A DNA stretch of 64,000 nt from Octopus sinensis (GCF_006345805.1 NC_043001.1:84940001-85004000), one strand, 5' to 3'. Shown: positions 18,533 through 57,551, numbered from the stretch's first letter. The notes: generated by a model from the sequence alone, not told the origin. Program-made: numbers and translations.

Positions 18533-18623
<91 letters not shown>

Positions 18624-19252
18624 TACGACGGGCTTCTTTGAGTTTCCGTCTACCAAATCCACTCGGAAGGCTTTGGTCGGGCCGAGGCTATAGCAGAAGA
18701 CTCTTGCCCAAGGTGCCACGCAGTGGGACTGAAACAAGAACCCCGGAACCATGGTTTTGGCAAGCAGCTACTTACCACGTATGAATTAGCATATTTATAT
18801 TATTGGGCATTAGTACATGTATTTTTCTCCCAAAATATTTATTTGTCATTCCGATTACGATCCCATCTTTGAGTATGTTAAAAAAATTGACAAATATATA
18901 ATCAATTGACCAATACTTTTCATGTAGATGATGTCTGTTCGTGTTCTTCACTATAATAATTTATATTCCAGTTGGTGTGAGCATCATGTATGAGATGGTA
19001 TATATTTGTGTATACGTTTCTTTGTTTGTATGTCTGTATAGTACTATGACATAAGACTAAAAGACGTGAGAGATAAACAGAAAAATACGGTCAGATTGAT
19101 ATATAACAAGCTAACCGATGTAAGGAGCCGAGTGAAGAACGGTGATGGGAATTGAAATGCAGGTAGGTATTTAGCAGTGAATTTGAAAGAAAGGGAGAGT
19201 GACTAATCAATATAAAGAAAGAAAGAGAGCAGAGAGCAGAGTGCAACAAAAT

Positions 19253-19299
<47 letters not shown>

Positions 19300-19395
19300 C
19301 TATATCTCTATATATATGTTTGTATGCATATGTACACGCACACACACAAAAACACGCGCGCGCGCTTGCACACTCACACACACACACACACACAC

Positions 19396-19467
<72 letters not shown>

Positions 19468-19759
19468 GATATATATATATATACATTATATATATATATA
19501 TATTGTCAAAGATGGAGAACGATAAAGGATAAAGATAGAGGATAAAAATGAAGGAGAAAAATGAAGACGCAATTGAGAGATAGATTTACTAAGCCTGCGG
19601 AGTAGCAGAATACAGGATAAAAGGACAGAAGGAAATTGACGAGGAAACGTGAGAGACAAGCGTAAGAGGTGAAAATAAAGTCAAAATGTTGTAAAACATA
19701 GGGTGGGAGAGTGGGAGAGACGTAGCGAGAAACAGAGATAAGTGTGTGTTCACATACAT

Positions 19760-38638: not shown

Positions 38639-38777
38639 ATGGCAACCTCGTCTTATTCACTTCACTACTTTAATTATCGTGGTCGTGCCGAGATCTGCCG
38701 AATGCTGTTTGCGGCAGCGAATGTCCAGTACCAGGATATAAGAATTGACCGATCAGAATGGAGTCGTATTCGAAACC
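38639..38777 (+). CDS. S-crystallin coding exon 1 (M1-N46 + 1 nt)
   Basis: ATG at 38639 in ACAATGG context; ends C|GTAAGT (consensus donor at 38778); contains the GST N-terminal Tyr (Y10) and GRAE motif. Confidence 0.95.
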
Positions 38778-40787
38778 GTAAGTACGAAACCAAATATTTA
38801 ACCCATTTGCCACAATATTTCGGTTGAAAAGTACTGTTTTGAAGTTAATTTCGAAAATAATGCATAATTTATTAAAATAACATAATTATTAAATTAATAT
38901 AATTAATTATTAAATTAATATAAATGTCTATGAGATATAGCATATTAAGTCATCAGATTTTACCTTTCTGTCAAAAAAAATACGGACACACATGCATTCA
39001 CACACATGCATGCACACATGCATACATACAAACATACATACAGTGGCATTTTAAATTAGCTATTGTTTAACTTTTACATTATAAGGTCTTTCAATATTCT
39101 GTTGCTCTATTTTCATCTCCATTTCATTTTTTTCTTCTTTCTTTTTGCTACGGTGCTGGCTTCTGCATCATACTCTATGGCAACATAATATCTAAAAGAT
39201 TTTCTTTCGTAGGTGACAGTAATGTGATTGATGCCTTCAGTCTTGATCTGGTACTACCAAACATTTTTTTTCTGTTAATGTTTTCTGCCTTTTAACGCGG
39301 CGAGCTGGCAGAAACGTTAGCACGCCGGGCGAAATGCGTAGCCGTATTTCATCTGCCGTTACATTCTGAGTTCAAATTCCGCCGAGGTCAACTTTGCCTT
39401 TCATCCTTTCGGGGTCGATTAAATAAGTACCAGTTACGCACTGGGGTCGATGTAATCGACTTAATCTGTTTGTCTGTCCTTGTTTGTCCTCTCTGTGTTT
39501 GGCCCCTTGTGGGTAGTAAAGAAATAGAAATAGGTATTTCGTCTGCCTCTACGTTCTGAGTTCAAATTCCGCCGAGGTCGACTTTGCCTTTCATCCTTTC
39601 GGGGTCGATTAAATAAGTACCAGTTACGCACTGAGGTCGATATAATCGACTTAATCCGTTTGTCTGTCGTTGTTTGTCCTCTCTGTGTTTAGCCCCTTGT
39701 GGGTAGTAAAGAAATGGGTATTTCGTCTGTCTTTACGTTCTTAGTTCAAATTCCGACGAGGTCGACTTGCCTTTTATCCTTTCGGGGTCGATAAATTGAG
39801 TACTAGTTGCGTACTGGGGTCGCTTCAATCGATCGGCACTCTCCCCCCCCACATTTAGGGGCCTTGTGCTTGGAGTAGAAAGGAAAGAATATTTTTTGGC
39901 TTTTATGCTGTATGTACTTGGAACGGATCTCTTGTACTTGAACTGCTTGGAGGTACTCTTCGAAGTGGGATGCCATAATATTGTCAGTGTTCCATTATAT
40001 TATATACTTACTTATGCATGGGCGCAGGCGTGGGTGTGTAGTAAGAAGGTTATTTCCCAACCATACAGTTCTCGACTCAGGGCTGTTGCGTAGCACCTTG
40101 GGTGTCTTCTACTATAGTCCTGAGCCTACCAAGGCCTTGCGAGTAAGAGTCGGTTGACAGAAACGGAAAGAAGCTCGTCGTATATATATATATATATATA
40201 TAATTATATACATACATACAAATGTACGTGTACTTATATATGCGCGTGTACATATATATTTTGTATATACATATGTGTATATATGTTTATGTGTGTGGGT
40301 TTCCAAACAAATATCCTAATACAATATACCAATTACATAGTTGTGAACTACACGTAAGATTATAAGTACCTACAGACTTTAATGAATTCATTGTTTCATG
40401 AAACTGCAATTAATCACATATAATATGACAACTGAGGACATAAAAGTTGACATCAGAGAAATATTAGCTCGCTAAGTGAGCAATGAATACATTTATTGAA
40501 AACTAACGGGAAATAGCCTTGCTAAGGCGTTAGTCAATTATTTTATTAGATAACTGTCTCCAAACATTAAACAGCGGGTATGATGGGATAGGTTAAATCA
40601 TATTAACCCAAACAAGTAAAAGAATAGAAGAAATGAAGAAATGAAGTTGAAAATGCCCAGAGAATATTCTAGAATTAATTATAATTTAATTATATTTTAA
40701 AACATGCGTTTATACTTTACAAGTTTCACATGAGATTTTCAAGTCTAGTGTGTGTGTATGTGTTTGTGTACATATATACCCGCCCCC

Positions 40788-40822
<35 letters not shown>

Positions 40823-41022
40823 TATAGAAGGAGCTTCTACAGGACTAGAACCTGCCTAAATGTATAAATGCCAATACAATTCTTGTTAACTAGCTTCCTG
40901 AAGATTTCTCTTGAATGAAACAGTTCTAGTCCTGTAGAAGCTCCTATATAATAAATTAATTTTACTCTACTATGTATTGAGTACCTTATTTACTGTGGTT
41001 AACCCCGAATCAACCCGGGACC

Positions 41023-41065
<43 letters not shown>

Positions 41066-42437
41066 CTCTGTATAACTTCCTTAATGGGGATATAATACTG
41101 AAAACCATTGCGGTATTTGTCTTCAGAAATCTTCTCGTATAGTGCTAAAATACAGACGTGTCACATTATCTGAAGAAAAGCATCTAGCACCGATGGTGAA
41201 ATTGCTAAATCATGATTCCTGTGTCTTTGCACATTAACATTTTCAAATAACCACTATAAATCGCATGCTTAGACAAAATGTGTGTATGTATAAGAAAAGT
41301 TAATTAAGCGCTGGCGGCAGGTAAACACAAATGACAACAACCCAAACAATGTCACCATAAACTTTCAGTAGTTGTTGACACAATGACAGGATAATTTCGC
41401 CGCATTAACCAAGCGCACTTCTGCCAATGTGTATAGTTTACCATGAAGAATATGTTGAACTGTCCTCATATAGTACAATATTTCAGATTAATTATCAACG
41501 ATTTAGCACCGAGAAAAATTTGAAGTATTTAACGCAAATAAATGAATCTGTAGCAGTTAACTTGACTAGTTCTTCACAATTAAAGAATAGTTTTCGGGTG
41601 TTGAAGAACAGAGTTCAGATATTGAAGAGCAGTTTTTGGGTGTCTATTATGCATGACGTATTTGCTGCATTCTCCGAAATGACCGTAACTTACGATGTTC
41701 ATATTCAATTTGCTGAAATGGCCATAATATACAATGTGCAATTTGACTTGAAACTATTAAATCAAAATCAATTGCTGTAAAGTTACATGAGGAAACTTTT
41801 AATGGTTCATTTGAGATTTCAGTCAGCTGATTGAATTAATATTAAGTAATCTTGTAACTTTTAATGTCGCATAGCAATCAGCTACTTGAGAGACAGAAAT
41901 AGAAGCACAAATTTGATAATCTGATAACTGTTTCAAGCACTGATTCGAAAATAGTTTCAACAGTTTTATTCCTCTCAGAAAATTGTACTACACTTTAGAA
42001 CAATTCTGTTCTTACTAGTTTCAAGATTAGCAGGTGTAGAGTCTTTCAAGAAAAGACAAGTATTTTTGCCGTATATCTAATCTAATCTGCAACACTCAAG
42101 CGGATGATTTCAAAAATTACGTGAAACGGAAAAATAACTTGGATCTATGAAATTATTTAATTTTCATATAATCTAAATTATTCAGTTTCCGCTAAGTCCA
42201 TAATATAAAATTTGTAGTTACTCTACAAATTTTATATTTGTCATGTAACGCATATATTGTGGAAAGTTTATAAGGGTAAGACATATCGAATACAGTTTGC
42301 CTGCTAGAGATGGCAACTATCCGTCCTTACTCACAATATATGAACAAAGAAGCGATCTTGCAACAAGCTAAAGTAGCTGGCTTAAAATCTCTAAAATAAA
42401 TTCACATAGTAACAGTACTAAATAATTTAAATAAATA

Positions 42438-42515
<78 letters not shown>

Positions 42516-42800
42516 CGCCATGATTGACCACTAACTCCAAAAGTTATATTATCTCTCTGTTTATTTCCTCGGAGCTTAAAAGTCTTTCTCACGCGCCCGA
42601 GCGTCAAACTAATACACTTGTTTGTTGTTTATACACCTGTTTTCATCTTTTGTTTATCTGTAAATTTCAACTATATATACAGGTAAAAACAAAATAATAT
42701 GTGCGTGGGTTACATAAATAATATTTTCAGGATAAAATAAAAAGACAACATATAAAAATACTTCCCTTTTTTTGTCTTTTTATTTAATCCCGAAAATATT

Positions 42801-42868
<68 letters not shown>

Positions 42869-42961
42869 TAGAATAAGAAAATAGAAAGGCCTTGGTAGGT
42901 GGTTTTAAAATCTCTGAAAGAGATTCACATGGTAACGGTACTAAACATTGTATGTATATAT

Positions 42962-43016
<55 letters not shown>

Positions 43017-44260
43017 GTGTGCGCGTGTGTGTATATGTTGGTCAATAATTAATGAGTACGAGCTTACATAAATTAAATATTCAGAATTAAATAAAAACAC
43101 AAGAATCGGAAATATCTCCACATTGGTTGTCCTTTTATTTAATCCTGAAAATATCTTACACACACACACACACACACACACATTATTAAATATATATATA
43201 TTATCTATATAAAAGGCAGTTTGTCTGTCTGTGTGTCTGTCTGTGTTTCTGTCAGGTTGTACCCTCACCCTGACCACGGCTTTCAACCGATTCTGATGAA
43301 AACTGACACACACAACGCCCAATGTCATAATTGAAAACTAACGCAGCGAAAATTTTGAAAAGTTTCCCCAGTTCTGAAAAAAATTGATAAATTCGACATG
43401 GGGTCAAGAATCTAAGCTTTTCATATGCAACACATTTTCTGTTGTAGTTTTCGCAACGTGCAATCGATTTTCACCAAACTCATGGTGAAGCTTAATGTTA
43501 CCCCAAGAAACTTAATTCTGTCCTTAGTTTTCCATGCAATACATTACCATCAGAAAAAAAATCGATAAAATCATGCAATTTTGGGAAATCGCGTTCAAAT
43601 TCAAGATGACATATTTTCGACAATATCTTTAACAAATTGGCAGGAATTTTTTTTTCAAATTCACAGCGAGCATCATGTCTGCTCCAAGGAGCTATATGGC
43701 CCTTTTTATTCCAACAGGATACTTTATTACTGGAAAAAAAACGGTTAATTAAATCATATGTGGCACACATAGCAAACCGATTTGTGTATTAAACACAAAC
43801 CACAGACTGTCTAGGGGACGCAACTCGACCTTCTCTCTTGCTCCCCCAAATTACTATCAAACATCTATCGATAATTCAACCCACAGGAGGAAATCTAGAC
43901 TTAATCTTCAAGGTATCCCACATACACACCAAAAATTACAACGAAACCTCCAGACTAACCTAAGTTTTGGTGAACCAATTTCTACCAGGAAATTACATTC
44001 GAGACTTTACCCCCAACACCGCCACTTCAAGCAGTCAACGAGACAAAACATAACCAGACAACATAACCTTGGCATAGGAACGTCGTATACACAGAAGTAT
44101 TCGAGTGAAGAGAAGACATTGCAACCTACACATGCGCCTTCCTTCCCTAGAGGAAAAGGACTAGATCGGGATTAGTCGGTGCCTACTAGGAGCTCTTACA
44201 TACCCGAGCAACGCCGGCTATGCTGCTAGTATATATATATATATATATGCATGTATTAAA

Positions 44261-44314
<54 letters not shown>

Positions 44315-45653
44315 GAATAAAATATAAAATGACCTTGGTACTGTATATATTTGAGCAAATGAATAGAAATGGCATTTCTGTTAATTTTTTCCAGTTTAAT
44401 AATTAGATGTTTTTAAGACACCTCTAACTTACAAACATCTAATTTATTAAAGCGAAAAAAATTATCTGCCAAGCCATTTCTATATATTTTTTCAAATATA
44501 TAACACTGTACCAAATATATTTACTGTACTTACTGCTTGTACTTGTGCACATATATATATGTATGTATTTATTTAAGTATTATGTATATACGTATCTATG
44601 TGTGTGTATGTGTGTGTAGGTATGCATATAGGTCATTCACTATTGTTTTTAAAGATCGTTATTGACTCCCTGTTACCCAAAATATTTGCAACAATTTGCA
44701 ACCATCTTGCATATCTATTGATTTGCGTAATTAAGGAACAAAATGCAAAAAAATAGAACAGAGATATGCAACAAAATATTTAGGGACCATGTTCATACCG
44801 GGTTGAAGGTATAGGATATAAATGGGTCAATGTGGATTGAATAAAGAAAATATCTACACGTAGCCAGTTTGGAAGAATAGACATCATTTTACAATATTTT
44901 ATGTATATATTCGGGTCTTTTGCCTAGAATAAAAAAAGGAATATTTTATGTAAATAAGTGTAGGCATGCCTGTGTGGCTAGGGAGTTAACTACCTAACCA
45001 TGTGCTCTTGCGTTCTGTCCTACTGTGTGGTTTCTTTGGGTAGTGCCTTCTACTATAATTACAGACGAAGCAATTGGGAAACGGAAACGGAAACTGAAAA
45101 GAAACCAATCGCATATATATATACATGTAGTTTTTGTATGCTAGGCTACTGGGTTTAAATTGATATTAATTAAATTAATATTAAATTTATCTCCCTCATT
45201 ATTTAAATATTAAAATAAATATGTTCTCTAATAGGCGGCATTAACTGCAGTAAATTATTTACTCCAGACTTTCCCTTCCGAAATTTTAGCGCGCCAGAAG
45301 TAAGACATTTGAAAGTATCCCTAATGTAATCAGTATAACTAAGCACGTGTCTGTTTTGGTACGGAAAGCTGGTGGTTAGTTTTACAAATTACATTACCTG
45401 TGGAACGATCGCACTGACGAGTCTACTGACAATTGGATTATATAAGTAATTCGTTTGTTAATAGACGAAACCGCCGGTCTGTGAGTAATTCTGTTTTTTT
45501 ATATAATTTTCATCTGCCTTGCCCGCCTAATTGTTCTGGTGTCCGCTGAATTTTCCTCTAGAGAACACTCTTTTCTTTGTAGTTTGATCGTAGGTGATCT
45601 ATTCTAGCATGCGGCCGACTACCTAGTAGTCTTGCCCTTTGAATATACACATG

Positions 45654-45701
<48 letters not shown>

Positions 45702-45860
45702 CTATATATATATATATATATTTCGGTGCGAATGGTTTTGTTAAGCGGTGTCAAGTTTCAAGTTTTACAATTCTGTAAATAATAAATTCATGTGCTGTTT
45801 GAAAATCATTTAAAAGATTCTGGGGGTACATTCAACTAAAAGTTTCTCTAAATTTCTCGA

Positions 45861-45904
<44 letters not shown>

Positions 45905-45937
45905 TGTGTGTATGTGTGTGTGTGTGTGTGTTTGTGT

Positions 45938-45988
<51 letters not shown>

Positions 45989-46890
45989 TCAGACAGGGGA
46001 AACAACGTATCTATCAGCCGAAATTCATATCCATTAAAGATCTTAAATACGACTATTTCGCTTCTATGATTCTGTCAATTTATTCATTCCATTTTCTTAT
46101 GCACAAAAATTTCATTTCTACAATCGAACTAAGTGGATGAGTTCTTTCCGAACTGATCTAATTTGAGGGATTCCTACGCAGTAATGCCAATGCTACAGAA
46201 AATCGTGTTTGTAACTCAGTTTTGAAAGCACGAGAAAAAAAAAAACTAGAACAAGGTTGATGCAAAAAGCGGAATGAGAAGACAGTCCTTTGTCCTCTCA
46301 TTTCACTTTTTGCATCTCCCCTCTCATTTTTCTTCTTCTTCTTGAAAGGGGTTTCTCATGTGTGTGCGCCCTGTTTTTCAAATAGAAGAAACCTTATGCG
46401 CAGAAACCAAGGATTGCTTGGAGACACAATACACATGATAAAAGATTGCCTAACCACGGGTCTAGATGGCACGGAAATATTAGGAGCTCTTCTTCTAAAG
46501 CAATATACCTTGAATGATATTTATCATTCACTGGATGGAGCAGTTGTTCACCCTATCATAAAGGAACAGTAAACAACACACACACATGCACACACACACA
46601 CACACACAGAGAATAAGAGAGAGATAGAGAGAGATAAAGGATAAAATCCCTCTTCGGTCACGAATGACCGTGGGATTGCACCTAGAATGTTACCCTCCGA
46701 GGCACAAATCCGGGAAAGGTTGTTTATGGAAGGCCAGCAGTCGTCCATGCATACCAGCCTCCCCACTTTTCTTTTTCATCCCCCAAGTAACCCTAGGTTC
46801 AATAAGATTCTCTGCGCTGAATTGCATATGCGCTGAATTACCGCTGAATTACCGGCGCGGAATTGTTACGTGCTGAAGTGTCATGCCACG

Positions 46891-46938
<48 letters not shown>

Positions 46939-48280
46939 ACACACGCACACACACACACACGAAGACACACACTCACACACATGTATATGTATATATGTGT
47001 GTGTGTGTTTGTGATGCTTATGTAGGTCCACCACTTCCTCTTGATAATCGGTGTTGGTTCGTTTACACCCACGCAAACTAGCAGTTCGACAAAAAGAAAA
47101 AGTGCTATGGAATAAGTACCACGTTTAAATATACATACTGGAAGCGATTCGTGTGAATAAATCAATCAATGCTGTCCAATGACTGAAAGAAGAAAAGCTT
47201 AAACCATATTAAAAACAAGTAATTCCCAAATTAAAGATACATACGAGAGTATACTGAAAAAGTTCCTCGCTTTGGGTAAAAGAAACTAGAGGAAGATCAG
47301 TTAATTATGATTTAATTCAACATAATTACCTCTCAGATTGACACATTTATTCCAGCAGGCCTTCAGTTTTCCAAGGCCCTGGAAAAGAATTCCGAAGGTT
47401 GGGCCTCCAACCAGGCTTTTTGCGATAAACTTAAAACCAGAAACTTTTAACCATCCCCTCGTATTATTGATTGTTATCACCGAATGCCACAGCATAACGC
47501 CGGAAAGAGTCGGAAGTAGTTCTTGGAGAATTTCTATGATTTCACCATTCCCGTTTCTGGCGTCCTAATCAGCCTGATGTTAATCCTACGTATTATTATG
47601 TGTGGGGCGAGTTTGAGGGAAACATCAACCGCTGTGCATGAAACACCAAAAGCCGAACTGGTAGCCAAAATCAAGCGGCTGCTTGGAGAACCTCTCGGGG
47701 AGACACTGAGAAACGCATGCACCGGGTTCCAGAGTTGGTGGAAAACTAAACGCAGCTACTTTGAGTAAATTGTTATCTCGCAGCCACAATCTGGTTGATA
47801 GTTTTGGGTTATTTAAAAATACATTTATATTTAGCTGGATAATTGTGTTTCTTTCCGTTTATGTCAACTGTCAAGTTTAGCCCGAACGCCCTGTAGAGCT
47901 ATTGCTATTAAACTGGAAATGGTTATGTTTCTAGCATAGATAGGTTAACTTTATATGTTTATTGTATTGAAATAGATAGAATCAAGAGTAAATGACTTCA
48001 TATTTTCACACTTTCTCTTCCTCATCTTCTCTCACATCGTGTGTATATGCGTGTGACAATATTTACATTTATATGCACATACACACACAAGCACACACAC
48101 ACACACATATGTATACACATATACATACACAGAAAGAGTAAGAGAGAGAGAGAGAGATAGACAGATATATATATGTATATAGTTTTAAATCCATACAAGA
48201 GAAGGAACTGAACGTTTTTCATATATATATATATAATATATATATATATACATACATACATACATACATATATATATATA

Positions 48281-48331
<51 letters not shown>

Positions 48332-48358
48332 GGTATATATATATATATAGGTATATAT

Positions 48359-48389
<31 letters not shown>

Positions 48390-48422
48390 CATGCATACAT
48401 ACAGAAATAGTGAACGAGAGAC

Positions 48423-48467
<45 letters not shown>

Positions 48468-49080
48468 ATCATTTTTAAAAAAATCCAAACAAGGGAAGGA
48501 ATTGAATAGTAACACTCGAGAGGGGAGGGAATGAGTGAGATTGACTTACATGAATACGGAAAAGATAAAAAGCAAAAACGTGTGAGATAAACCATACATC
48601 CACTTATATTACCAAGCTACTGTGTCCTTTCCTTCGTCGTATTGTCTCTTTATTCATGTCTTCCTGTAAATAAATACAATATATTTTCTATCATATCACC
48701 ACACAGAAATTACTTTATATTTCTGACTGGTATTCGCTTCATACGTTTAATACATGATTATTATTATCCTGTGTATTTGACCTGGAGCATAATCGATACA
48801 ATATAACTTTATGAAATGTTTAGTTGTCCTTTGTTCATCTTATTTCAATTCCTATCACATTTGTCTGCGGCAACGTTCTTATATTGAAATTTCAGGGATG
48901 CCCGGTGGTATGATGCCAATGTTAGAGTTCGACAATAAGACGCAGTACATACAAAGCATGGCTATCACCAGGTACTTGTCAAGGGAATTTGGTAAATATA
49001 CCCTATATTATTGATTTTGTTGTTGGTGTTTTTATTGATGTTATTATTGTCTTTGTTGCTATTATTATTATTATTATTAC

Positions 49081-49112
<32 letters not shown>

Positions 49113-49181
49113 GTAGTAGTACTAGTAGTAGTAGTAGTAGTAGTAATAGAAGTAGTAGTAGTAGCAACACTAGTATTAGTA

Positions 49182-49222
<41 letters not shown>

Positions 49223-50931
49223 ATGGTGGTGGTGGTGGTGGTGGTAAAGCGGTGAGTTAGCAGAAACGTTAACAACCGGACAAAATGTTTAGGGATTTTT
49301 TGTCCGCCTTTATGTTCTGAGTTCAAACTCCATCGCGGTTGACTTCGCCCTTCATCCTTCGGAGTCGATACAATAAGTACCAGGAGAGTTGTAATCAACT
49401 TACCCCCTCCACCGAGGTTTCTGGCCTTGTGCTAAATTTGAAACTATTATTATTTGTATTACTATTATTTTGTCATCATCGACAAAATATCAACAGATTC
49501 TCAACTTGATATTTAGAAACAAACATAATTGTTATTGCGATTAATTTTTTTATTCAGAGATTTAGCAATTATTTTTTAAAAACATATTTCTCGTGGACGT
49601 GTGGTAAGTAGCTTGCTTACCAACCATATGGTTCCGAGTTCAGTCCCACTGCGTGGCACCTTGGGCAAGTGTGTTTTGCTGTAGCCTCGTGCCGACCAAA
49701 GCCTTGTTAGTCGATTTGGTAGACGGAAACTGAAAGAGGCCCGTCGTATACATATGTATATATGTATGTGTGTGTGTATGTATATGTGTTTGTGTGTTTT
49801 TGTTTGTCCCCCCGAACATCGCTTGACAACCGATGCTGGTATGTTTACGTCCCCGTAACTTAGGGGTTCGGGAACAGAGACTAATAGAATAAGTACTAGC
49901 CTTACAAAGAATAAGCCCTGGACTCGATTTGCTCGACTAAAGGCGGTGCTCCAGCATGACCACAGTCAATTGACTGAAACAAGTAAAAGAGTATTTGCCA
50001 AAGAACTAAGCACAATCTCATTGTAGTTTAATCGATTACGTGATGCATTATTGATTACGTGATGGATTATTGATTTTAATCTCCTCTCTTTTCTAAAGAT
50101 TAATATCTGATTACAATACGTACAGATTACTAATTAGATTGGTGTGTAATTAAAGTTAACTAAAATGTGATAAGAGAAATAACTCAGCATGTTCAGTTAC
50201 ATATATATATATGAATAACGTAGAAAGAATACAGTTGTAAAAATTACAATGCTATTTAGATATTTGATATATTCAATATATCTACGTCTTAGAGAAATGG
50301 TAATGAAGAATAGCTCCACTGGAGTAGGTGCACCAATCTCCAATCTCGAGAATGAAGTTCTCTCCAAAGTTAACACGACATTGAGCTAAAGGATAGGATT
50401 ATTACCTACCTCAATAAACGTCTTCAATAGCATGTCATCAATCGCTATGAGAGTTAGAATCACACTAAAAGAGTAAAACACATATGATCAAGTTAAACGA
50501 AAATGAGCTAAGAGAAATAACTTAGATAGGTCAGTGACATGTATATGAACTACAGGCAAATACAGGTATATCAAATACTATACAACATATATTCTTCATT
50601 CATTCAAAATATTGCCGTCTTTTGAGAATGTATCAGTATTACAAAATTGCAACTGAGACCGAGTTTACTTGAGAAGGGAAGGTAATCTCAAAATTCAAGA
50701 ATCCTCAAAAGTTGATATGGCTATGAAGGGAAGGAACAGGTTTGTTATCTGTAAGCAAATTAATTTGAAAAATGATATTATTCTAATTATCTATATTTCA
50801 GAGGCTTCACTTGTACTCTTCAAAATATCAGTAATTTGTATTCTGTAACTATTCTGGTACATACATACATACATACTTACATGCATAATCCCGAGGACAA
50901 AGAAATAAGAACCCATAGAAGCCATAGTCAG

Positions 50932-50983
<52 letters not shown>

Positions 50984-51614
50984 ATACAGGCACGCCCAGA
51001 TAAAAGGCAAACACATGCACAGTTAACGATACCCACCTTCGAATGGAGGAAATACCTGGGATAGTAGAGTTACTGAGGAGGTCACAAGTGTGTGCCGAAA
51101 GATTTCCAGTCAATGGAAATAAGATAAAATAAGACCCAAAAATAAAAGACTGATGAACGAATATATAGTGCGTGTGTTTATTTGGCAAAAAACAAAAGTG
51201 AGCATAACGATTTAACAATATCTGTTTAAACACAGAATTTCATATGGGGAAACTTGCAAAACAAATTCATAAACGTATATATATATATATAAATAAGAGT
51301 ATGTGTGTGTGTGTACGTATGAATGTATGCATGTATGTATCATCCCAAAGGACTTGAGAAACCTGCATGGGGTGAATGTGTTTTCAAAATGAAACTAGAT
51401 CTCTTACTGTCGAGTTTCCCAGATGAATCAACTTCACAACAGGAAGTGCAAATAAATGCAGAGTCGTCACACTCTCTCATGCACCACATATGAAGTTCTA
51501 AGAAGAATTTGTGAAGTAAAAGTTATGTAGCAACACCAAATGGCGGTGCCTCCAGCATGGCCAAAGCTCGTAAGCTGAAACTAGTTCAATTCAATTCATT
51601 TCAATTCATATGAA

Positions 51615-51653
<39 letters not shown>

Positions 51654-53125
51654 GTACATTTTAAAAGCTCGAACTAAGATGCAGTTACCATCGGTAACTG
51701 TACATTATCAGGAACATTAACTGCTGTGCACTTCTCTATTAATCTCCTGGAGTATATGCTTAAAGGTCAGAACATCAACGTTTGTAGTGATAAACTATCT
51801 CAACTATCTTTAGAATCTATATTTTACATTTTCTAACTGTTTGTTTCAGGTTTCCATGGCAACACAAATATGGAGATGACTAGAGTTGAGTTTATTTCAG
51901 ATTGTTTCAACGAAATTATGGACGATTACATGAGGATGTATCAAGACAGTTCTGGTGCAATTGTGGTAATTATTTTATAGATTTTATTATTGTTTACAAA
52001 AGTGATTATTTTTTTTAACTTACGAGAGAAACCAAGCTGAATATTTATTCATAATTGCAATTTTTCAAAATAATATTCGATACGATACATTATATCTCTG
52101 TGCGCGTAGCTTTTAATGAGTAAAATAATAATTTGCTGTATACCAAAACATATTATCTCCTTCCAAGGTATATTCGAGATGTTAATTTGTTTCTCTTTAG
52201 TGCATGGTTTATTAGAGAAAATTAGATTTATAGGTGCACGCTGATGAAGGACGGATATATTGCATAATGTATTTAGTGATTATACCCGAATTAAAAGTGA
52301 CAAGTGGACAAATTGTTGATACAAATCTGGCAATTCAGTGCCGACTTGGAATCTAACAATAATAACTAGTTATTATAAATGCAAAGTCTAGGGATAAGAA
52401 GTATTACATACAACATGTGCTATGTGAAGATAAATAATTATATGAGGTAATGTATGGCTACGTGTTTCACGTGTGATTGTGCATAGTCTGGTGGATTAGA
52501 GCTTTGTACCCACGATTCCTGGACCGAGTGGTGCGTTTGTTCTTGAGCAACACAATCCACCTCACGTTGCTCTGCGATCATTTCGACATCTGACATCATT
52601 ATAAGCGAATTAGAACAGACTAGTCTAGCTGCGTTTGTATTATATGAATAGCTATAAACAACTACTCACTCTACAGTAAGGAAAGTGAGGGAAATTAGAG
52701 GTCTTGGAAATGCATCAAAAAGCGATTAAAACGCCAAAGCTAGTCACCAGGAGCTTCTTCTGACCGAAATGAGCACAAAAATAAAAATGTCCTACTCACG
52801 CTATCTACTTTTCTTGGCGAGACTAAGAATGTTATCTTTACTAATAGGAACACATAAGTTTATGTTATATCTCTCGATAAATACTTCATTCACCATCTAT
52901 TACACATAGATATACTAAATATACTTGATATACATATCACCATGTAAGATTTTAGACATTTTTTATAAAAGATTTATAGGCGTAGACGTGGCTGTGGTAA
53001 GTAGCTTTCTTACGAATCACACGGTTCCGAGTTCAGTCCCACTACGTGGTACCTCGGGCAAGTGTTTTCTACTATAAGTATTGTGAGTGAATTTGGTAGA
53101 AGGAAACTGAAAGAAGCCCGTCGTG

Positions 53126-53163
<38 letters not shown>

Positions 53164-53171
53164 TATGTATG

Positions 53172-53241
<70 letters not shown>

Positions 53242-54434
53242 ATATATGTGTATAAGTTTATGTGTCTGTGTTTCTCACCCCAACATCGCTTCACAACCGA
53301 TGCTGGTGTGTTTACGTACCCGTAAGAAAAGAAACCAATAGAATAAGTACTAGGCTTACTAAAGGCGGTGCTCCAGCATGGCCACAGTCAAATTACTGAA
53401 ACAAGTAAAAGTGTAAAGAGTAATCGTTGGATATACGTTAACCGAAGCCCTTTAAATACTCATTGTACAGTCTTTGAAAATAAAAGGCACTTTAGATAAT
53501 TTAGTCCAAGATATATAATTTTTGGACGAAATTACAGGAAGTTCAAAGCGCATATGTCATTCACATGCACCTCTGGGATTAAAACTGACTTAACTGTACC
53601 AACATTGCGCGTCTGCATACTAGTTCGAGCTTTTAAGATATTAACCAAATCTTGCCCAAAGCACATGGCAAGGTCTGAGAAAAATATCAAGGACAGACTC
53701 CATCTAAACCATATATTTTGAGATAGACTGTCTCTGAAGACAAATCAGTAGAATTATGGTATGATCATGTTAAAGACTTTGTACGTATGTGCACTTGGTA
53801 AGTAGTGACTAAATACTGAGTATAAAATATGGTGTTAATCTTAAAGTGGGTGCTAACGTAGATAGTGAAATGGGGCAATGAGTTTTAAGTAAAAAAAAAA
53901 TTACAATATTAGCGATGAGAAATAATTTATTATCATGATATTGATCATGTCCATGAAAAGCACCAAAACAACCACGGAATTTGAAATATACATAAAAATG
54001 ATATGACGTTCGTTAAGTCTCTGTTTGTTATTAAAATGATTTCTTTTTCTTTCATTGATTTCAGTTTAAGAAAGATTCTGATCCAAATGTTGCGGTAAGT
54101 TCTTATATCACATATTGGGAGCCCTCCTCCCCTCCTATTCAAATGTTATACGCGCGCACGCGCGCTGACCCACACATTCATGATCAGTTGTAACATCTGT
54201 TGCTTAACGCCTCTAAAAAAGAATGGTGTAGTAAACGTATGGATTGTAGTGAGGAATTGTTATTCAAGAGGCGTAGGAGTGGCTGTGTGGTAAGTAGCTA
54301 GCTTACCAACCACATGGTTCCGGGTTCAGTCCCACTGCGTGGCACCTTGGGCAAGTGTCTTCTACTGTAGCCTCGGGCTGACCATAGCCTTGTGAGTGGA
54401 TTTGGTAGACGGAAACTGAAAGAGGCCCGTCGCA

Positions 54435-54497
<63 letters not shown>

Positions 54498-57000
54498 TTG
54501 TCCCCGCAACATCGCTTGACAACTGATGCTGATGTGTTTACGTCCCCGTAACTTAACGGTTCGGCAAAATAGACCGATAGAATAAGTACTAGGGTCAATT
54601 TGCTCGATTAAAGGCTGTGCTCCAGCATGGCCACAGTCAAATTACTGAAACAAGTAAAAGAGCAAGAGGAAGTAATGCTTTGTGAAGAAGCAATGAATAA
54701 CTGTTCAGTGAGACAGGTCAGGGATGATAAGAGAAGTAGAAATTTATGAGGCTGATGTATCTGAGTTAGTAGGCATGCTGCAACGATGTTACAGGGCCAT
54801 ATGTTGAAACACATCGGCTCTGGGCTTCAATAGACAGAAGCAAAATAATTTACTAACATTATTTTTGTGCTACAATTTCATTGTGGTAGAATCAATAGAG
54901 TAAGTTACAATGTAATATTCTATTCAAATATGCTACAATGTAGTGTACCGTTATTCATGTATAATATAATGTAATGTTCAATTTACACTATATTCTCCTC
55001 ATATAAATATGGCTGGCATTGAGCCTATGTTTGAAATACATATATTTTCATGCTTCAAGCAGATGCAATTTTTCACCATATTAATCTTTTATATTTTCTA
55101 GCTATTATTTTCAGAGAAGCAGCGTGAAAAGATGGATATTGGGAGGTCACCATTGTTGTTGATATTGATATTATTACTGTTGTTTTCGTTATTGTTCTTA
55201 TTTTTTACACGATAATGGCGTCCATCAGGGTGATCGTCTCCATAACAACACCATGTTTTCCATTTCTTTCGATCATAATGGCGTTTAAGAATTATTTCAG
55301 GAATTTTGAATGCTTTCTTTTAGCACTTGTAATTGTTTCGATTCCTTGGCATTAGCTTTATCGTTGTCGTTGTATTTGTTGTTCTTGATCGTCTTGTTGT
55401 TGTACTTGTTTTTATGACTATTTTTGTTCTTGTTCTTACATTTGATTGATTGATTGATTGATCGTTCGAGTTCTGGTAATGAAATTAATGAAGATGATGA
55501 TGATGATGATGATGACGACGACAACGGCAACATCAACAACAACGAAAAGAATGATGATATTATTTACATATTTTCTCTTTCCAATTGACAGCGCGCGAAA
55601 ACCTTACGGTTCGAAACCACCTGTGAACGTGTCCTACCGTTTATGGAAGAGACTTTGCAGAGGTTTGATGGCGGCAACCTTTTCTTTATGGGAGAGAAGG
55701 TAACTCACTTCACTACACTTCAGTTCATCTCAATGGTTTCTATTTTATTTATTTATCCCGTTATTATACAACTCCTTATCGTCTATACTTTCGTTTTGTC
55801 ATCAGTTATGCTCCACGGATGTAAATTCAGGCAGCATTTATTGTAATAAATTCTTGTTGATTTTGTTGCTATTGTAATAATGTTTACTGTTATTGTTTGT
55901 AATACTGCTATTGTAACATATGTCAATATTGTTATATAGAATGCTGTTCTGCGTGTAATAGGGTGAAGAGTTCAATTCGAACTGGCACTAATATTAGAAA
56001 CATTAGATATATTTTCCGTCTATAATCTCCTCTCTCTTTCAGCCATTACTCATCCACCATCTTCTCCTCATTATGAACATCAATACTAGCATTAACATGA
56101 TCGCCATCATTACCATCAGCCTCATCATCTTTTTTATCGTCATCATCAGTCATCATTACCACCACCATCACTACCACCACATCAATCCTATCATTATAAT
56201 CATCATCAACATCATCGTCGTCAGGATAATATCACAAATAATTTGCCTCAATATCCTAAATGTTCCACCCATCTTTTATGTTTCCAGTTCAAATTCGTTT
56301 CAGACCAACTTTGTCTTCCAGTTTTCAGGGGCAGATAATTTATGTAAGTGTTTATAAGAATATACCCGAAGTGAAGTGTCTCGGTGAAGCGTTCTATTTA
56401 CTGAATGCAATTACAGTAGGCATTCACATACGTATTACGGAAAAAATAATTTCGATCCCTTGGAATTATTCCAAACGACATTAGAAAATGGATCCTCCAC
56501 TTGGAGTGTTGAATATCCAAGGGGAAAAAACAGTGAAATAACTCCATAAAGATCAGACAAGTGAAGTCTTTGAATGACTGAGATTGACTAGTTTGAAGTG
56601 GATCTGGTCTTTAAAGCAATCTGGCCAACACAATGGATATTTTTCTGTTGTATAAGACCTCATCAGCTAAATAAAATCTAGTGATTGCCCGAAACGTTGA
56701 ACCACCTTTCTTTCATTCCATGAGCGTCTGCCAAAGCTTTGCATGTACCATGTCCTCGCCGTGTTGCTTTTTTATTGTGTTTGTTCTTCGTTTTGGAAAG
56801 TTACTATATATATATATATATCGAGAGAATTCACAAAAAAAAACCAGAAGACGAAGACAGGTGGTGTAGACAACAAACAGTTGTATTAGTATAACGCTCG
56901 GGAAGTGAAAAAGTCTTTAACTTTTCGAGCCTACGCTCTTCCACAGAAAGGGACACAGAAAGAAACAAGGAGAGAAAATAAAGAATACACACACACATAT

Positions 57001-57031
<31 letters not shown>

Positions 57032-57551
57032 CGTGCAAACGTGCGTGTATGTATATGCATGCCGTTGTGTTGGTTTGTTTATTTCCATGTAACTCAACGT
57101 TTTGACAAAGAACCCAATGGCATAAGTACCAGACTTAATATAAAAGTACAGGGATCGATTTCTTCGATTTAGTCTTAAAATGTGGTGCTCCAGTATGGCC
57201 AAAATTTAACGACTGAAACAAGTATAACGTAGAAGATAAAGGGCATCAAAGATGATGTGAAGATTTATTTACTCAACTGTTCTTATCTATGTAAAACAAT
57301 CTCATGGGTTCGTACGAGAGTAATACCTTATAAATCGTTGTCGTTATTTCGTTTCTTTCTGTTTATTTTTAAATCTTATTTTACAGATGACTATGGCCGA
57401 TATGATGTGTTTCTGTGCCCTGGAGAACCCTATGAGAGAAAACCCGGCGCTGTTAAACTGTTACCCTAAACTTCAGGCATTGAGGAACAGAGTGATGAGT
57501 CACCATACCATTGCTCCTTACCTGACCAGACGGGGAATGACGGAGTTCTAA
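38639..57551 (+). CDS. S-crystallin (sigma-class glutathione S-transferase-derived cephalopod lens protein), 6 coding exons, 217 aa
   Basis: Manual splice join(38639..38777,48896..48991,51850..51965,54065..54094,55592..55699,57387..57551) gives an uninterrupted ORF: [217 protein letters not shown]. All five introns are GT..AG, phases 1,1,0,0,0. Motifs [20 protein letters not shown], QSMAIxRYLxREFG, DDYMRMY and [15 protein letters not shown] plus 21 Met (about 10%) are S-crystallin hallmarks. Confidence 0.95.
39297..39885 (+). mobile_element. Family-A SINE trimer in intron 1
   Basis: One full unit plus two head-less units starting at GGTATTTCGTCTG (about 39533 and 39717). Other single family-A copies: about 25960-26170(-), 29680-29810(+), 33500-33670(-), 49248-49445(+), 58300-58465(+), 61820-61985(-). 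Confidence 0.88.
40892..40942 (+). ncRNA. Minimal type I hammerhead ribozyme in S-crystallin intron 1 (sense)
   Basis: Stem I AGCUUC/GAAGCU (6 bp); CUGAAGA 40898-40904; stem II UUC-[UCUU]-GAA with U.U at 10.1/11.1 (non-canonical); GAA 40917-19; stem III ACAG-[UUCUAGUC]-CUGU; A17 at 40936 (GUA). Confidence 0.7.
43204..44229 (+). mobile_element. Non-autonomous Helitron (about 1.03 kb) in intron 1
   Basis: Inserted between A(43203) and T(44230); 5' TCTATATAAAAGGC followed by (TGTC)n; 3' CTAG preceded about 10 nt earlier by GC-rich hairpin CCCGAGCAACGCCGG; no TSD; no coding capacity. Confidence 0.8.
44335..44514. repeat. Imperfect foldback / MITE-like element
   Basis: TTGGTAC..ATATATTTGA..ATAGAAATGGC / GCCATTTCTAT..TCAAATATAT..GTACCAA outer arms plus inner AATTAGATGTTT/AAACATCTAATT. 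Confidence 0.6.
45409..45484 (+). ncRNA. Type I hammerhead ribozyme, canonical core, in S-crystallin intron 1 (sense)
   Basis: Stem I UCGCA(45409-13)/UGUGA(45480-84); core CUGACGA 45414-20; stem II GUCUA/UAGAC (G10.1-C11.1) with extended imperfect hairpin; GAA 45467-69; stem III ACC-[GCC]-GGU; C17 at 45479 (GUC triplet). Confidence 0.85.
47242..47895. mobile_element. Two adjacent Tc1/mariner end fragments in intron 1
   Basis: TACGAGAGTATACTGAAAAGTTCC mariner-type terminus at 47242; C-terminal remnant [17 protein letters not shown]...YFE* (+) ending in a TIR-like ...GTTTAGCCCGAACGCCCTGTA at 47895. Confidence 0.55.
48896..48991 (+). CDS. S-crystallin coding exon 2 (R47-G79)
   Basis: TTTCAG| acceptor at 48894-48895, G|GTAAAT donor; 96 nt, phase 1-1; encodes [31 protein letters not shown]. 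Confidence 0.95.
49592..49991 (+). mobile_element. Family-B CORE-type SINE with internal (TA)n(TG)n
   Basis: Head GTGTGGTAAG..GGTTCAGTCCC, CORE-like GGCACCTTGGGCAAGTG, internal SSR, 3' part ending GCGGTGCTCCAGCATG..TGACTGAAACAAGTAAAAGA. Other copies: 18338-18780(-), 25181-25300, 29840-30000(-), 40020-40182, 44962-45110, 52979-53420, 54270-54662; 3' parts at about 51540 and 57060-57240. Confidence 0.85.
51850..51965 (+). CDS. S-crystallin coding exon 3 (G79-V117)
   Basis: TTGTTTCAG| acceptor, GTG|GTAATT donor; 116 nt, phase 1-0; encodes [38 protein letters not shown]. Not in the supplied ORF track. Confidence 0.93.
54065..54094 (+). CDS. S-crystallin coding exon 4: 30-nt loop-insertion mini-exon ([10 protein letters not shown])
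   Basis: Long polypyrimidine tract TTTCTTTTTCTTTCATTGATTTCAG| and perfect GCG|GTAAGT donor; phase 0-0, stop-free; restores the loop length between helices 4 and 5 expected for S-crystallins. Confidence 0.8.
55592..55699 (+). CDS. S-crystallin coding exon 5 ([36 protein letters not shown])
   Basis: TTTTCTCTTTCCAATTGACAG| acceptor, AAG|GTAACT donor; 108 nt, phase 0-0. Confidence 0.93.
56820..56990 (-). mobile_element. Solo 3' tail of the same PLE family, antisense in S-crystallin intron 5
   Basis: Reverse complement reads CCCTTTCTGTGGAAGAGCGTAGGCTCGAAAAGTTAAAGACTTTTTCACTTCCCGAGCGTTATACTAATAC. A further deleted tail lies at about 42510-42680(+). Confidence 0.75.
57387..57551 (+). CDS. S-crystallin coding exon 6 (MTMADMMC...RRGMTEF*)
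   Basis: TTATTTTACAG| acceptor; 54 codons + TAA at 57549-57551; typical S-crystallin C-terminus. Confidence 0.95.

What the first reader, a model, noticed from the sequence alone, without database searches (positions are those of the whole stretch)
45409..45490. Fully canonical hammerhead ribozyme in sense orientation inside S-crystallin intron 1
Seen: every conserved core position is present (CUGACGA, G10.1-C11.1, GAA, A15.1-U16.1, GUC triplet with predicted cleavage after 45479), with stem I 5 bp, stem II 5 bp plus a long imperfect extension, and stem III 3 bp. ATTAC (45393-97) can also pair with GTAAT (45485-89), leaving an 11-nt bulge in stem I where type I hammerheads make tertiary contacts. 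Known: type I hammerheads accompany Penelope-like elements and retrozymes, and conserved intronic hammerheads exist in amniotes. Inference: the pre-mRNA of this presumably lens-expressed gene may self-cleave in intron 1, which could affect splicing kinetics or release RNA fragments.
Basis: partly seen in the sequence, partly recalled or inferred. Interest (0 to 1): 0.75.

Follow-up and report, generated by a model that had tools for sequence, protein, structure and literature searches.

The report
Hammerhead ribozyme carried by an intronic retroelement
The octopus S-crystallin intron does contain a complete hammerhead ribozyme motif, but it belongs to a short mobile-element insertion of a kind common in this genome, so it is most likely ordinary repeat cargo and not a regulator of the gene.

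Summary
Window 45409-45484 (+) carries every conserved type I hammerhead position, with cleavage predicted after C45479. It lies in sense orientation in the first coding intron (38778-48895) of a GST-fold S-crystallin 3-like gene. Chance does not explain it: there were 0 matches in 1500 simulated windows. Rfam Hammerhead_1 scores 23.7 bits, below its gathering score of 34, largely because of a 34-nt insertion in helix II.

The host-function interpretation is not supported. The motif sits in a ~0.52-kb insertion (45127-45654) bounded by (TA)n. Related copies occur at three other Octopus loci. One of them has a diverged hammerhead of the same unusual architecture, with compensatory stem I changes. 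The element forms partial tandems, has 35% GC, and folds into a strongly self-paired RNA. These are features of non-LTR retrozymes and Penelope-like pLTR derivatives.

Hammerhead-like motifs of at least three families occur about 100-fold above chance in ~0.44 Mb of sampled Octopus DNA. Helix III is predicted to be very weak as a monomer.

The motif is identical in O. vulgaris (not significant), falls in an assembly gap in O. bimaculoides, and is absent from the Argonauta ortholog.

Verdict: a new member of a known kind, of low to moderate interest.

The parts
45409..45484 (+). Type I hammerhead motif. Stem I is 45409-13 with 45480-84. Core CUGACGA is 45414-20. Helix II is 45421-66. GAA is 45467-69. 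Helix III is 45470-78. C17 is 45479, with predicted cleavage between 45479 and 45480.
   Evidence: Sequence read. Rfam Hammerhead_1 gives 23.7 bits. It is the only descriptor match in the window. There were 0 matches in 1500 simulated windows.
45393..45397 (+). Possible distal extension of stem I. ATTAC pairs with GTAAT 45485-89 across an 11-nt one-sided loop (45398-45408).
   Evidence: Complementarity was checked. This pairing is not favoured in thermodynamic folds of the longer context.
45127..45654 (+). Retroelement insertion ('family A' copy). It consists of a GTAGTTT remnant of an upstream repeat module, then module B, an internal region with the hammerhead, and module A. GC is 35%.
   Evidence: Both flanks align to the O. 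bimaculoides intron right up to (TA)n. The O. vulgaris copy has the fuller form A-linker-B-internal-HHR-A, about 1.13 units with a period of ~551 bp. Related copies occur in L005, L006 and L009. The unit RNA folds with z=-4.7.
45112..45126 (.). Left (TA)n-like flank. It is the simple-repeat tail of a SINE-like repeat at 44937-45129.
   Evidence: The same position in O. bimaculoides is a longer (TA)n that runs into an N gap.
45653..45721 (.). Right (TA)n microsatellite flank.
   Evidence: In O. bimaculoides, (TA)n is followed by the same TTTCGGTGCGAATGG sequence.
38778..48895 (+). First coding intron (GT...AG, 10118 nt) of the S-crystallin 3-like gene. It contains the insertion.
   Evidence: Gene model from tblastn and splice sites. 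GST domains were found. The orthologs are P0001 and P0052.
38639..57551 (+). S-crystallin 3-like (GST-fold) gene, coding range. Exons are 38639-38777, 48896-48991, 51850-51965, 54065-54094, 55592-55699 and 57387-57551.

Best explanation
The motif is the hammerhead ribozyme of a short, non-coding, non-autonomous retroelement of the animal retrozyme / Penelope-like pseudo-LTR kind. The element inserted into a (TA)n microsatellite inside the intron.

In the element's own life cycle, the ribozyme would process multimeric element transcripts. It most likely acts as a dimer, in which two copies build an extended helix III.

At this locus there is only one copy of the ribozyme, in about 1.0-1.1 element units. 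It can release no unit-length RNA. As a monomer it is expected to cut the host pre-mRNA weakly or not at all. It is most likely a passenger with no host function.

Shown: the motif, the bounds of the insertion, the repeat family, and the conserved ribozyme architecture in a second family member.

Inferred: the retrotransposition mechanism, the dimer requirement, and the lack of host function.
For: 1. The motif is real.
- The core is complete and the three helices are present.
- Rfam gives a sub-threshold Hammerhead_1 match that also fits non-core consensus positions (GAGUC...AAUAGACGAAAC).
- The chance expectation is below 1 in 1500 windows.

2. It lies in an insertion-like segment.
- Window positions up to 45129 and from 45703 onward align with the orthologous O. 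bimaculoides intron.
- The ~570 bp in between is bounded by (TA)n on both sides.
- There is no room for an ORF, and none is visible in six-frame translation.

3. It belongs to a repeat family.
- The O. vulgaris ortholog shows the 3' 80 bp repeated upstream, 92% identical, in a partial tandem with a ~551-bp period.
- L006 34030-34243 and L009 32202-32430 carry the junction module A-linker-B, ending in (TA)n. The L009 copy has an adjacent inverted partial copy.
- L005 31689-32392 is a 1.4-unit partial tandem ending in (TA)n.

4. The ribozyme is a feature of the family.
- The L005 copy has, at the collinear position, CUGAUGA, a 45-nt helix II, GAA, ACAAUUGU, U17 and a 5-bp stem I.
- Both copies have a mismatch at the sixth helix II position.
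- Against the window copy, three stem I pairs differ on both sides (A-U to G-C, G.U to C-G, U-A to C-G) and one differs on one side.
- The chance of such a motif arising in a 320-nt stretch is about 2e-5, from the rate measured.

5. It has retrozyme-like properties.
- GC is 35%.
- The unit RNA has an MFE of -143.5 kcal/mol against -115.4 +/- 6 for shuffles, z=-4.7.
- The literature describes animal type I hammerheads in low-GC, highly self-paired, tandem ~150-450-bp repeats, and retrozymes as derived from PLE pLTRs (PMC7229834, PMC7761336, bioRxiv 10.64898/2026.07.22.740005).
- The literature also reports (TA)n target preference, inverted 5'-truncated partners, and hammerheads near the 3' ends of Penelope-like elements (PMC8557442).

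6. The monomer is weak.
- The helix III hairpin is -0.3 kcal/mol with pairing probability ~0.01.
- The hammerhead fold is -19.4 kcal/mol against an MFE of -22.3 kcal/mol.
- Stem I pairing probability falls below 0.02 in longer context.
- The inter-copy helix III duplex is -11.6 kcal/mol.

7. Such motifs are abundant.
- There are 6 independent hammerhead-like loci from 3 families in ~0.44 Mb of sampled Octopus DNA, against 0.14 per Mb expected by chance.
Against: - No autonomous Penelope-like element with matching termini was found, so the mobilising enzyme is unknown.
- The unit (497-551 bp) is longer than the 150-450 bp described for animal retrozymes, and no array of two or more full units was seen.
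- Similarity between the window and L005 copies in the internal, ribozyme-bearing part is not significant on its own (z=1.7; 37 of 500 shuffles scored as well). Homology there rests on shared terminal modules, collinearity and motif architecture.
- Genome-wide copy number could not be measured. All sampled loci lie in S-crystallin gene regions of one chromosome.
- The empty site could not be shown because the O. bimaculoides assembly has an N gap exactly there.
- The motif carries no substitution between O. sinensis and O. vulgaris, and its core is fully intact. This is also what a selected element would show.
- Thermodynamic folding ignores the tertiary contacts of hammerheads, so weak monomer activity is a prediction only.
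Confidence: 0.8

Rival explanations
1. Exapted intronic ribozyme. The element-derived hammerhead has been recruited by the host and cleaves the S-crystallin 3-like pre-mRNA in intron 1, tuning splicing or transcript yield. This would be analogous to the conserved intronic hammerheads of amniotes.
For: - It is in sense orientation inside the intron.
- The core is fully intact, with the efficient GUC triplet.
- There are 0 differences between O. sinensis and O. vulgaris across 45316-45493, against 12 differences in the rest of the 521 aligned positions.
- Helix II is very stable.
Against: - The stretch without substitutions is not significant. P is about 0.15 for the 76-nt motif and about 0.08 for the longest difference-free run, computed from the counts.
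- The A. hians ortholog, whose protein is at least 90% identical, has a 2-kb intron 1 with no alignable sequence and no hammerhead.
- The motif is part of a repeat insertion.
- Helix III and stem I are predicted to be poorly formed in context.
- In Xenopus, about 43% of retrozyme copies lie in introns, so an intronic location is commonplace.
Confidence: 0.05
2. Solo or 5'-truncated remnant of an autonomous Penelope-like element (a pseudo-LTR fragment), as opposed to a dedicated non-autonomous retrozyme family.
For: - The flanks are (TA)n.
- The ribozyme lies ~90-175 bp from the element's 3' end.
- Partial tandems form terminal direct repeats, and L009 has an inverted partial copy.
- All of these are described for Penelope-like elements (PMC8557442, PMC4209133).
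- 'Family C' motifs in L006, L002 and L011 show 5' truncation within the ribozyme, (TA)n flanks and inverted pairs.
Against: - No RT or GIY-YIG ORF lies next to any of the four family A loci. The long ORFs in the sampled loci include only a LINE-type RT.
- The L005 copy is a complete repeat-internal-repeat unit of only ~0.7 kb.
- The two readings overlap, because retrozymes are proposed to derive from PLE pLTRs.
Confidence: 0.12
3. Chance resemblance. An AT-rich intron happens to contain CUGANGA, GAAA and short complementary runs.
For: The hammerhead core has few specified bases. The Rfam score is below the gathering score. CTGANGA alone occurs 35 times in the window.
Against: - There were 0 matches in 1500 simulated windows at this stringency.
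- Non-core consensus positions also match.
- A second, diverged element copy carries the same architecture at the collinear position, with compensatory changes.
Confidence: 0.02

Closest known systems
Animal non-LTR retrozymes (tandem repeats with type I hammerheads; PMC7229834, PMC7761336)
   Same: - A type I hammerhead with a short, near-palindromic helix III.
- Low GC (35%).
- A non-coding unit of a few hundred bp that folds into a highly self-paired RNA.
- Tandem or partial-tandem copies, with dispersed monomers, including in introns.
   Different: - The unit is ~500-550 bp, against ~150-450 bp.
- Only 1.1-1.4 units per locus were seen, with no long arrays.
- Helix II is a 45-46-nt imperfect hairpin, not ~4 bp with a loop that contacts loop 1.
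- circRNA expression was not tested.
Hammerheads of Penelope-like element pseudo-LTRs (PMC4209133, PMC8557442)
   Same: - The ribozyme lies near the 3' end of a terminal repeat structure.
- Most copies are dispersed single motifs.
- Targets are (TA)n.
- Inverted partial copies occur.
- Helix II is longer than canonical.
- Self-cleavage as a monomer is expected to be low.
   Different: - No RT/GIY-YIG ORF is associated with the element.
- PLE 'min-HHRs' often lack helix III altogether, whereas this one has 3 bp plus a 3-nt loop.
- The helix II reported for PLEs is 7-8 bp, against ~19 bp here.
Rfam RF00163 Hammerhead_1 (newt satellite 2 / Schistosoma Sm-alpha type)
   Same: The core and the proximal helix II sequence match the consensus (CUGAcGAGUC...AAUAGGACGAAAC), and helix III is ACCG.CGGU-like.
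   Different: It scores 23.7 bits against a gathering score of 34. There is a 34-nt insertion in loop 2, and stem I has two non-consensus pairs.
Conserved intronic hammerheads of amniotes (HH9/HH10; cited in PMC7761336)
   Same: A type I hammerhead in sense orientation within an intron of a protein-coding gene.
   Different: Those are conserved across hundreds of millions of years at orthologous sites. This one is shown only in two sister species, sits in a recognisable repeat insertion, and is absent from Argonauta.

Membership tests
Hammerhead ribozyme, type I | Conserved core: C3 U4 G5 A6 N7 G8 A9, G12 A13 A14, A15.1-U16.1, and H17 (not G) | tested here: met
   CTGACGA 45414-20, GAA 45467-69, A45470-T45478, C45479.
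Hammerhead ribozyme, type I | Three helices around the core, with helix I open-ended and helices II and III closed by loops | tested here: met
   Stem I is 5 bp including one G.U. Helix II is 5 bp plus an extension. Helix III is 3 bp with a 3-nt loop.
Hammerhead ribozyme, type I | Score at or above the Rfam RF00163 gathering score | tested here: not met
   23.7 bits against 34. The alignment shows a 34-nt insertion in loop 2 as the main departure from the consensus.
Hammerhead ribozyme, type I | Loop 1 / loop 2 tertiary contact of canonical animal type I motifs | tested here: inconclusive
   Helix II is a ~19-bp hairpin, so no loop 2 lies near stem I. An 11-nt one-sided loop in an extended stem I is possible but is not favoured by folding. 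Tertiary contacts cannot be computed with these tools.
Hammerhead ribozyme, type I | Site-specific self-cleavage | not testable with these tools
   This needs in vitro transcription or end mapping.
Animal non-LTR retrozyme | Carries a type I hammerhead in each unit | tested here: met
   The window, O. vulgaris and L005 copies each carry one at the collinear position.
Animal non-LTR retrozyme | Tandem repeats of a short (about 150-450 bp) non-coding unit, from dimers to multimers | tested here: inconclusive
   There are partial tandems of 1.13 units (L002, period ~551) and 1.4 units (L005, period ~497). No locus with two full units or two ribozymes was seen.
Animal non-LTR retrozyme | Low GC (<45-50%) and a highly self-paired unit RNA | tested here: met
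   GC is 35%. MFE z-score is -4.7, and 0 of 100 shuffles folded as well.
Animal non-LTR retrozyme | Multiple dispersed genomic copies | tested here: met
   There are four independent loci in ~0.44 Mb of sampled O. sinensis and O. vulgaris DNA. Genome-wide copy number was not measurable.
Animal non-LTR retrozyme | Expression as linear and circular unit-length RNA | not testable with these tools
   No transcript data were accessible. A search for spurious ORF translations in transcriptome-derived proteins found nothing.
Penelope-like element (autonomous) | ORF encoding a telomerase-like RT with a GIY-YIG endonuclease, between pseudo-LTRs | tested here: not met
   The insertion is ~0.53 kb, between flanks that are orthologous in O. 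bimaculoides. No coding-like frame appears in six-frame translation of 44600-46400. Neighbouring ORFs have no Pfam hits.
Penelope-like element (non-autonomous derivative or solo pLTR) | Sequence identity of its termini with the pLTR of an autonomous PLE in the same genome | not tested
   No PLE was present in the ~0.55 Mb available, and there is no tool to search the whole Octopus genome. The structural hallmarks agree: (TA)n target, an inverted partial copy, and a ribozyme near the 3' end (PMC8557442).

The most novel reading that the evidence does not exclude
This particular copy has been co-opted. In cells that transcribe the S-crystallin 3-like gene heavily, two nascent transcripts, or the transcript and free element RNA, pair through the near-palindromic helix III (ACCGCCGGU). 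They form an active dimeric hammerhead that cuts intron 1 after C45479 and so modulates mRNA yield. Its perfect identity between O. sinensis and O. vulgaris would then reflect selection.
Probability: 0.04. Interest if true: 0.6.

Novelty: new member of a known kind. Interest (0 to 1): 0.25.

Why it matters
For the gene itself the finding probably does not matter. One weakly folding ribozyme copy in a 10-kb intron is typical mobile-element cargo.

The broader by-product is more useful. In about 0.44 Mb of Octopus DNA I found at least three families of hammerhead-like motifs. All have unusually long helix II hairpins (36-55 nt) and short palindromic helix III. They sit in (TA)n-associated short retroelements. 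None reaches the Rfam thresholds, and two of the three families are not listed even at E<=10.

If this density holds genome-wide, it implies on the order of 10^4 copies. Standard Rfam-based annotation of cephalopod genomes would then miss most of their hammerheads; for comparison, 235 Hammerhead_1 hits were reported for the giant squid (PMC6962438). It would also mean that octopus introns commonly carry sense-strand ribozyme motifs. That would be worth a dedicated genome-wide survey, but it extends a known phenomenon and is not a new one.

Tried and rejected
- A protein search with the 46-aa exon 1 peptide found nothing because the query was too short for the word index. The full spliced protein worked.
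- I tried to find more element copies through spurious ORF translations in public protein collections. I searched a concatenate of nine stop-free frames of 45130-45650 and looked up the 47-aa ORF 45203-45346 exactly. Neither returned anything.
I inspected the translations by eye instead and scanned three nearby ORFs, with no hits.
- The test of orthology in O. bimaculoides failed for a technical reason. The 338-N gap at L001 17948-18285 lies exactly between the two (TA)n flanks. The left contig there ends in at least 50 bp of TA-rich repeat, whereas the element in the window starts after ~14 bp. This hints at an empty, long (TA)n site but proves nothing.
- The local-alignment shuffle test of the internal regions of the window and L005 copies was not significant (z=1.7). 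I therefore do not claim nucleotide-level homology there.
- ARAGORN found no tRNA-like part in 44800-45900, so a tRNA-derived SINE head is not supported.
- Two further O. vulgaris loci, L010 and L011 (129 kb), contain no family A copy.
- Correction: the '-' strand coordinates printed were in reverse-complement coordinates. The motif listed there as 'L002 - 5359-5438' is at L002 48269-48348, outside the region equivalent to the window.
- I considered the chance explanation and rejected it.

Full report
**Observation**

The sequence at window 45409-45484 (+) reads as follows.
- Stem I: TCGCA pairs with TGTGA at 45480-84.
- Core: CTGACGA at 45414-20.
- Helix II: a 46-nt hairpin at 45421-66, whose base is GTCTA/TAGAC with G10.1-C11.1.
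- GAA at 45467-69.
- Helix III: ACC-GCC-GGT at 45470-78.
- C17 at 45479, followed by the 3' strand of stem I.

Every conserved hammerhead position is present, and the cleavage triplet is GUC. The further ATTAC/GTAAT complementarity (45393-97 with 45485-89), with an 11-nt one-sided loop, is also as described.

Rfam finds nothing in the window at gathering scores. In a local search it aligns Hammerhead_1 end to end at 45408-45485 with 23.7 bits (gathering score 34; E=0.0014 for 301 nt times 4227 families). That alignment also matches non-core consensus positions (GAGUC...AAUAGACGAAAC) and places a 34-nt insertion in loop 2.

My own descriptor search finds this as the only match on either strand of the window. 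In 1500 simulated 64-kb sequences with the window's dinucleotide statistics there were 0 matches at the stringency this motif meets and 2 at a looser one.

**Gene context**

I built the gene model from tblastn with a probe and from the splice sites. It gives a + strand gene with coding exons 38639-38777, 48896-48991, 51850-51965, 55592-55699 and 57387-57551, all with GT...AG introns. A 30-nt micro-exon at 54065-54094 encodes [10 protein letters not shown].

The 217-aa product has GST_N and GST_C domains. It is 93% identical to 'S-crystallin 3-like' of O. bimaculoides (P0001). The same 90% cluster holds the O. sinensis protein (P0052) and an Argonauta hians protein (P0051).

The hammerhead lies, in sense, in the first coding intron (38778-48895, 10118 nt).

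The window is 100% identical to the O. sinensis locus L003 over the region compared. By offset it corresponds to CM016863.1:84,940,001-85,004,000.

**Orthologous loci**

- O. vulgaris (L002): the segment is present at 97.7% identity and the hammerhead is identical. All 12 differences in the 521 aligned positions lie outside 45316-45493. From these counts, the chance of no difference in the 76-nt motif is about 0.15, and the chance of a difference-free run this long is about 0.08. This is not evidence of constraint.
- O. bimaculoides (L001): the intron aligns at 80-91% on both sides (window 44287-45129 and 45703-45819). The stretch in between is a 338-N assembly gap flanked by (TA)n on both sides. 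It is uninformative.
- A. hians (L004): intron 1 is only about 2 kb, nothing intronic aligns, and no hammerhead-like motif is found anywhere in the 29-kb locus.

**What the segment is**

The ~0.53 kb between the two (TA)n tracts (45127-45654) behaves as an insertion into the simple-repeat tail of a SINE-like repeat (44937-45129).

In O. vulgaris the segment is preceded by an extra 80-bp copy of its own 3' end (L002 16955-17033 against 17508-17585, 92% identical) plus a 25-bp linker. This is a partial tandem of about 1.13 units with a ~551-bp period. O. sinensis has lost ~105 bp of it.

I fetched nine further Octopus loci through S-crystallin paralogs. Searching them found related copies:
- L006 34030-34243 (-) spans exactly the junction '3' module A, linker, 5' module B' and then ends in (TA)n.
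- L009 32202-32430 (-), at a remote position on the O. vulgaris chromosome, has the same module. It is preceded by an inverted partial copy and flanked by (TA)n.
- L005 31689-32392 (-) is a 1.4-unit partial tandem, A-linker-B-internal-A-linker-B, with a period of ~497 bp, ending in (TA)n.

No copy was found in two other loci totalling 129 kb.

The element has 35% GC and no coding-like frame. Its 549-nt unit folds far better than shuffles: -143.5 against -115.4 +/- 6 kcal/mol, z=-4.7.

**The ribozyme belongs to the element**

The L005 copy carries, at the collinear position, CCUCCG-CUGAUGA-[45-nt helix II]-GAA-ACAAUUGU-U-CGGGG. It shares the odd architecture of the window motif:
- a 5-bp stem I;
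- a helix II of 45 nt (46 nt in the window) with a mismatch at its sixth position;
- a short near-palindromic helix III.

The two differ by changes that keep pairing. In stem I, A-U becomes G-C, G.U becomes C-G and U-A becomes C-G. Several helix II pairs are swapped. Its 10.1-11.1 pair is U.U, a weakness also reported for an axolotl hammerhead (PMC7229834).

Rfam does not list the L005 motif even at E<=10. The internal regions of the two copies are not significantly similar by a shuffle test (z=1.7). The case for homology of the ribozyme-bearing part therefore rests on the shared terminal modules, collinearity in the alignment, and the very low chance of such a motif arising in 320 nt (about 2e-5).

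**Abundance of such motifs**

A relaxed descriptor has a chance rate of 0.14 per Mb. It found two more families in the sampled loci:
- Family B: L007 7749-7811 and 40303-40368, with orthologous copies in L009.
- Family C: L011 55602-55687 (-); L002 48269-48348 (-) with an inverted partner; and a 5'-truncated, (TA)n-flanked copy at L006 14746-14877.

Both families have a helix II of 36-55 nt and a 2-bp helix III with a palindromic tetraloop. None is reported by Rfam.

Counting orthologous loci once, this gives about 6 loci in ~0.44 Mb, roughly 100 times the chance rate. The sample is not random, because all loci are S-crystallin regions of one chromosome. Any extrapolation to the order of 10^4 per genome is therefore rough.

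**Comparison with what is known**

The literature describes exactly this kind of object:
- Most animal hammerheads are type I, with a weak helix III and a palindromic loop. They cleave poorly as monomers and well as dimers.
- The classical ones lie in low-GC, highly self-paired tandem repeats called non-LTR retrozymes (PMC7229834, PMC7761336). A 2026 preprint derives these from PLE pLTRs and finds about 43% of Xenopus copies in introns (bioRxiv 10.64898/2026.07.22.740005).
- (TA)n targets, inverted 5'-truncated partners and hammerheads near 3' ends are Penelope-like hallmarks (PMC8557442).
- The giant squid genome paper reports 235 Hammerhead_1 hits (PMC6962438).

The present element differs in three ways. 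Its unit is longer (~0.5 kb). No multi-unit arrays were seen. Its helix II is very long, which rules out the canonical loop 1-loop 2 contact.

**Mechanism**

I consider the following most likely (confidence about 0.8). The motif is the processing ribozyme of a non-autonomous retroelement. It was carried into the intron by insertion at a (TA)n tract, before O. sinensis and O. vulgaris split.

With a single ribozyme at the locus, no unit-length RNA can be released. Thermodynamic folding shows:
- helix II is always formed;
- the helix III hairpin is almost never formed (-0.3 kcal/mol, pairing probability ~0.01);
- stem I is outcompeted in longer context;
- a two-copy helix III duplex is worth -11.6 kcal/mol.

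Cleavage of the host pre-mRNA is therefore expected to be weak. This is a prediction, since folding programs ignore hammerhead tertiary structure.

From general knowledge and not from a tool result: ribozyme cuts inside introns need not block splicing of exons tethered to the polymerase, and 5'-OH ends are poor substrates for the 5'-3' exonuclease. Even some cleavage might therefore have little effect.

**Verdict**

This is a new member of a known kind. The most interesting residue is the apparent abundance of long-helix-II hammerhead variants in Octopus that escape Rfam thresholds.

Noticed in passing
L007 7749-7811 and 40303-40368 (+); L009 40839-40905 and 74575-74640 (+): There is a second hammerhead-like family, 'B': CCAC-CUGAUGA-[36-39-nt helix II with A.G at its base]-GAA-ACGAUCGU-A-GUGG. 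Two copies lie ~33 kb apart and are present at orthologous positions in O. sinensis and O. vulgaris. Rfam does not report it even at E<=10.
   Followed up: partly
L011 55602-55687 (-); L002 48269-48348 (-) with an inverted partner at about 48440-48520 (+); L006 14746-14877 (+): There is a third hammerhead-like family, 'C': AUUUUC-CUGAAGA-[55-nt helix II]-GAA-ACAUAUGU-A-GAAAAU. The element ends ~95 bp after the motif, followed by (TA)n. One copy is 5'-truncated inside helix II and flanked by (TA)n on both sides, and one locus holds an inverted pair. These are hallmarks of Penelope-like elements. Rfam does not report it.
   Followed up: partly
window 54065-54094 (+): A 30-nt micro-exon, with AG/GT splice sites, encodes [10 protein letters not shown] in the S-crystallin 3-like gene. 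The O. vulgaris annotation P0047 skips exon 2 and reads into an intron at its 3' end, so that public model looks mis-spliced.
   Followed up: partly
window 45127-45131 versus L002 16955-17061: Relative to O. vulgaris, O. sinensis lacks ~105 bp: the upstream partial copy of the element's 3' end plus the linker. The deletion appears to lie between short GTAGTTT repeats.
   Followed up: yes
window 44937-45129, 53031-53141 and 54252-54450; many sites in L001-L011: An abundant SINE-like repeat ends in GGAAACGGAAAC...(TA)n or (CA)n tails. The hammerhead element sits in the tail of one copy.
   Followed up: no
L004 (Argonauta hians) 10001-19476 versus window 38639-57551: This S-crystallin 3-like protein clusters at 90% identity or more between Octopus and Argonauta, while it is only ~60% identical to the other S-crystallins of the same genomes. 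The gene spans 9.5 kb in Argonauta and 18.9 kb in Octopus. It is unusually conserved for a lens crystallin paralog.
   Followed up: no
L001 (O. bimaculoides) 17948-18285 and nine other N runs: The public O. bimaculoides chromosome assembly has N gaps at most long microsatellites in this locus (5.5 kb of 37.7 kb). Presence or absence of (TA)n-targeting elements therefore cannot be scored from it.
   Followed up: yes
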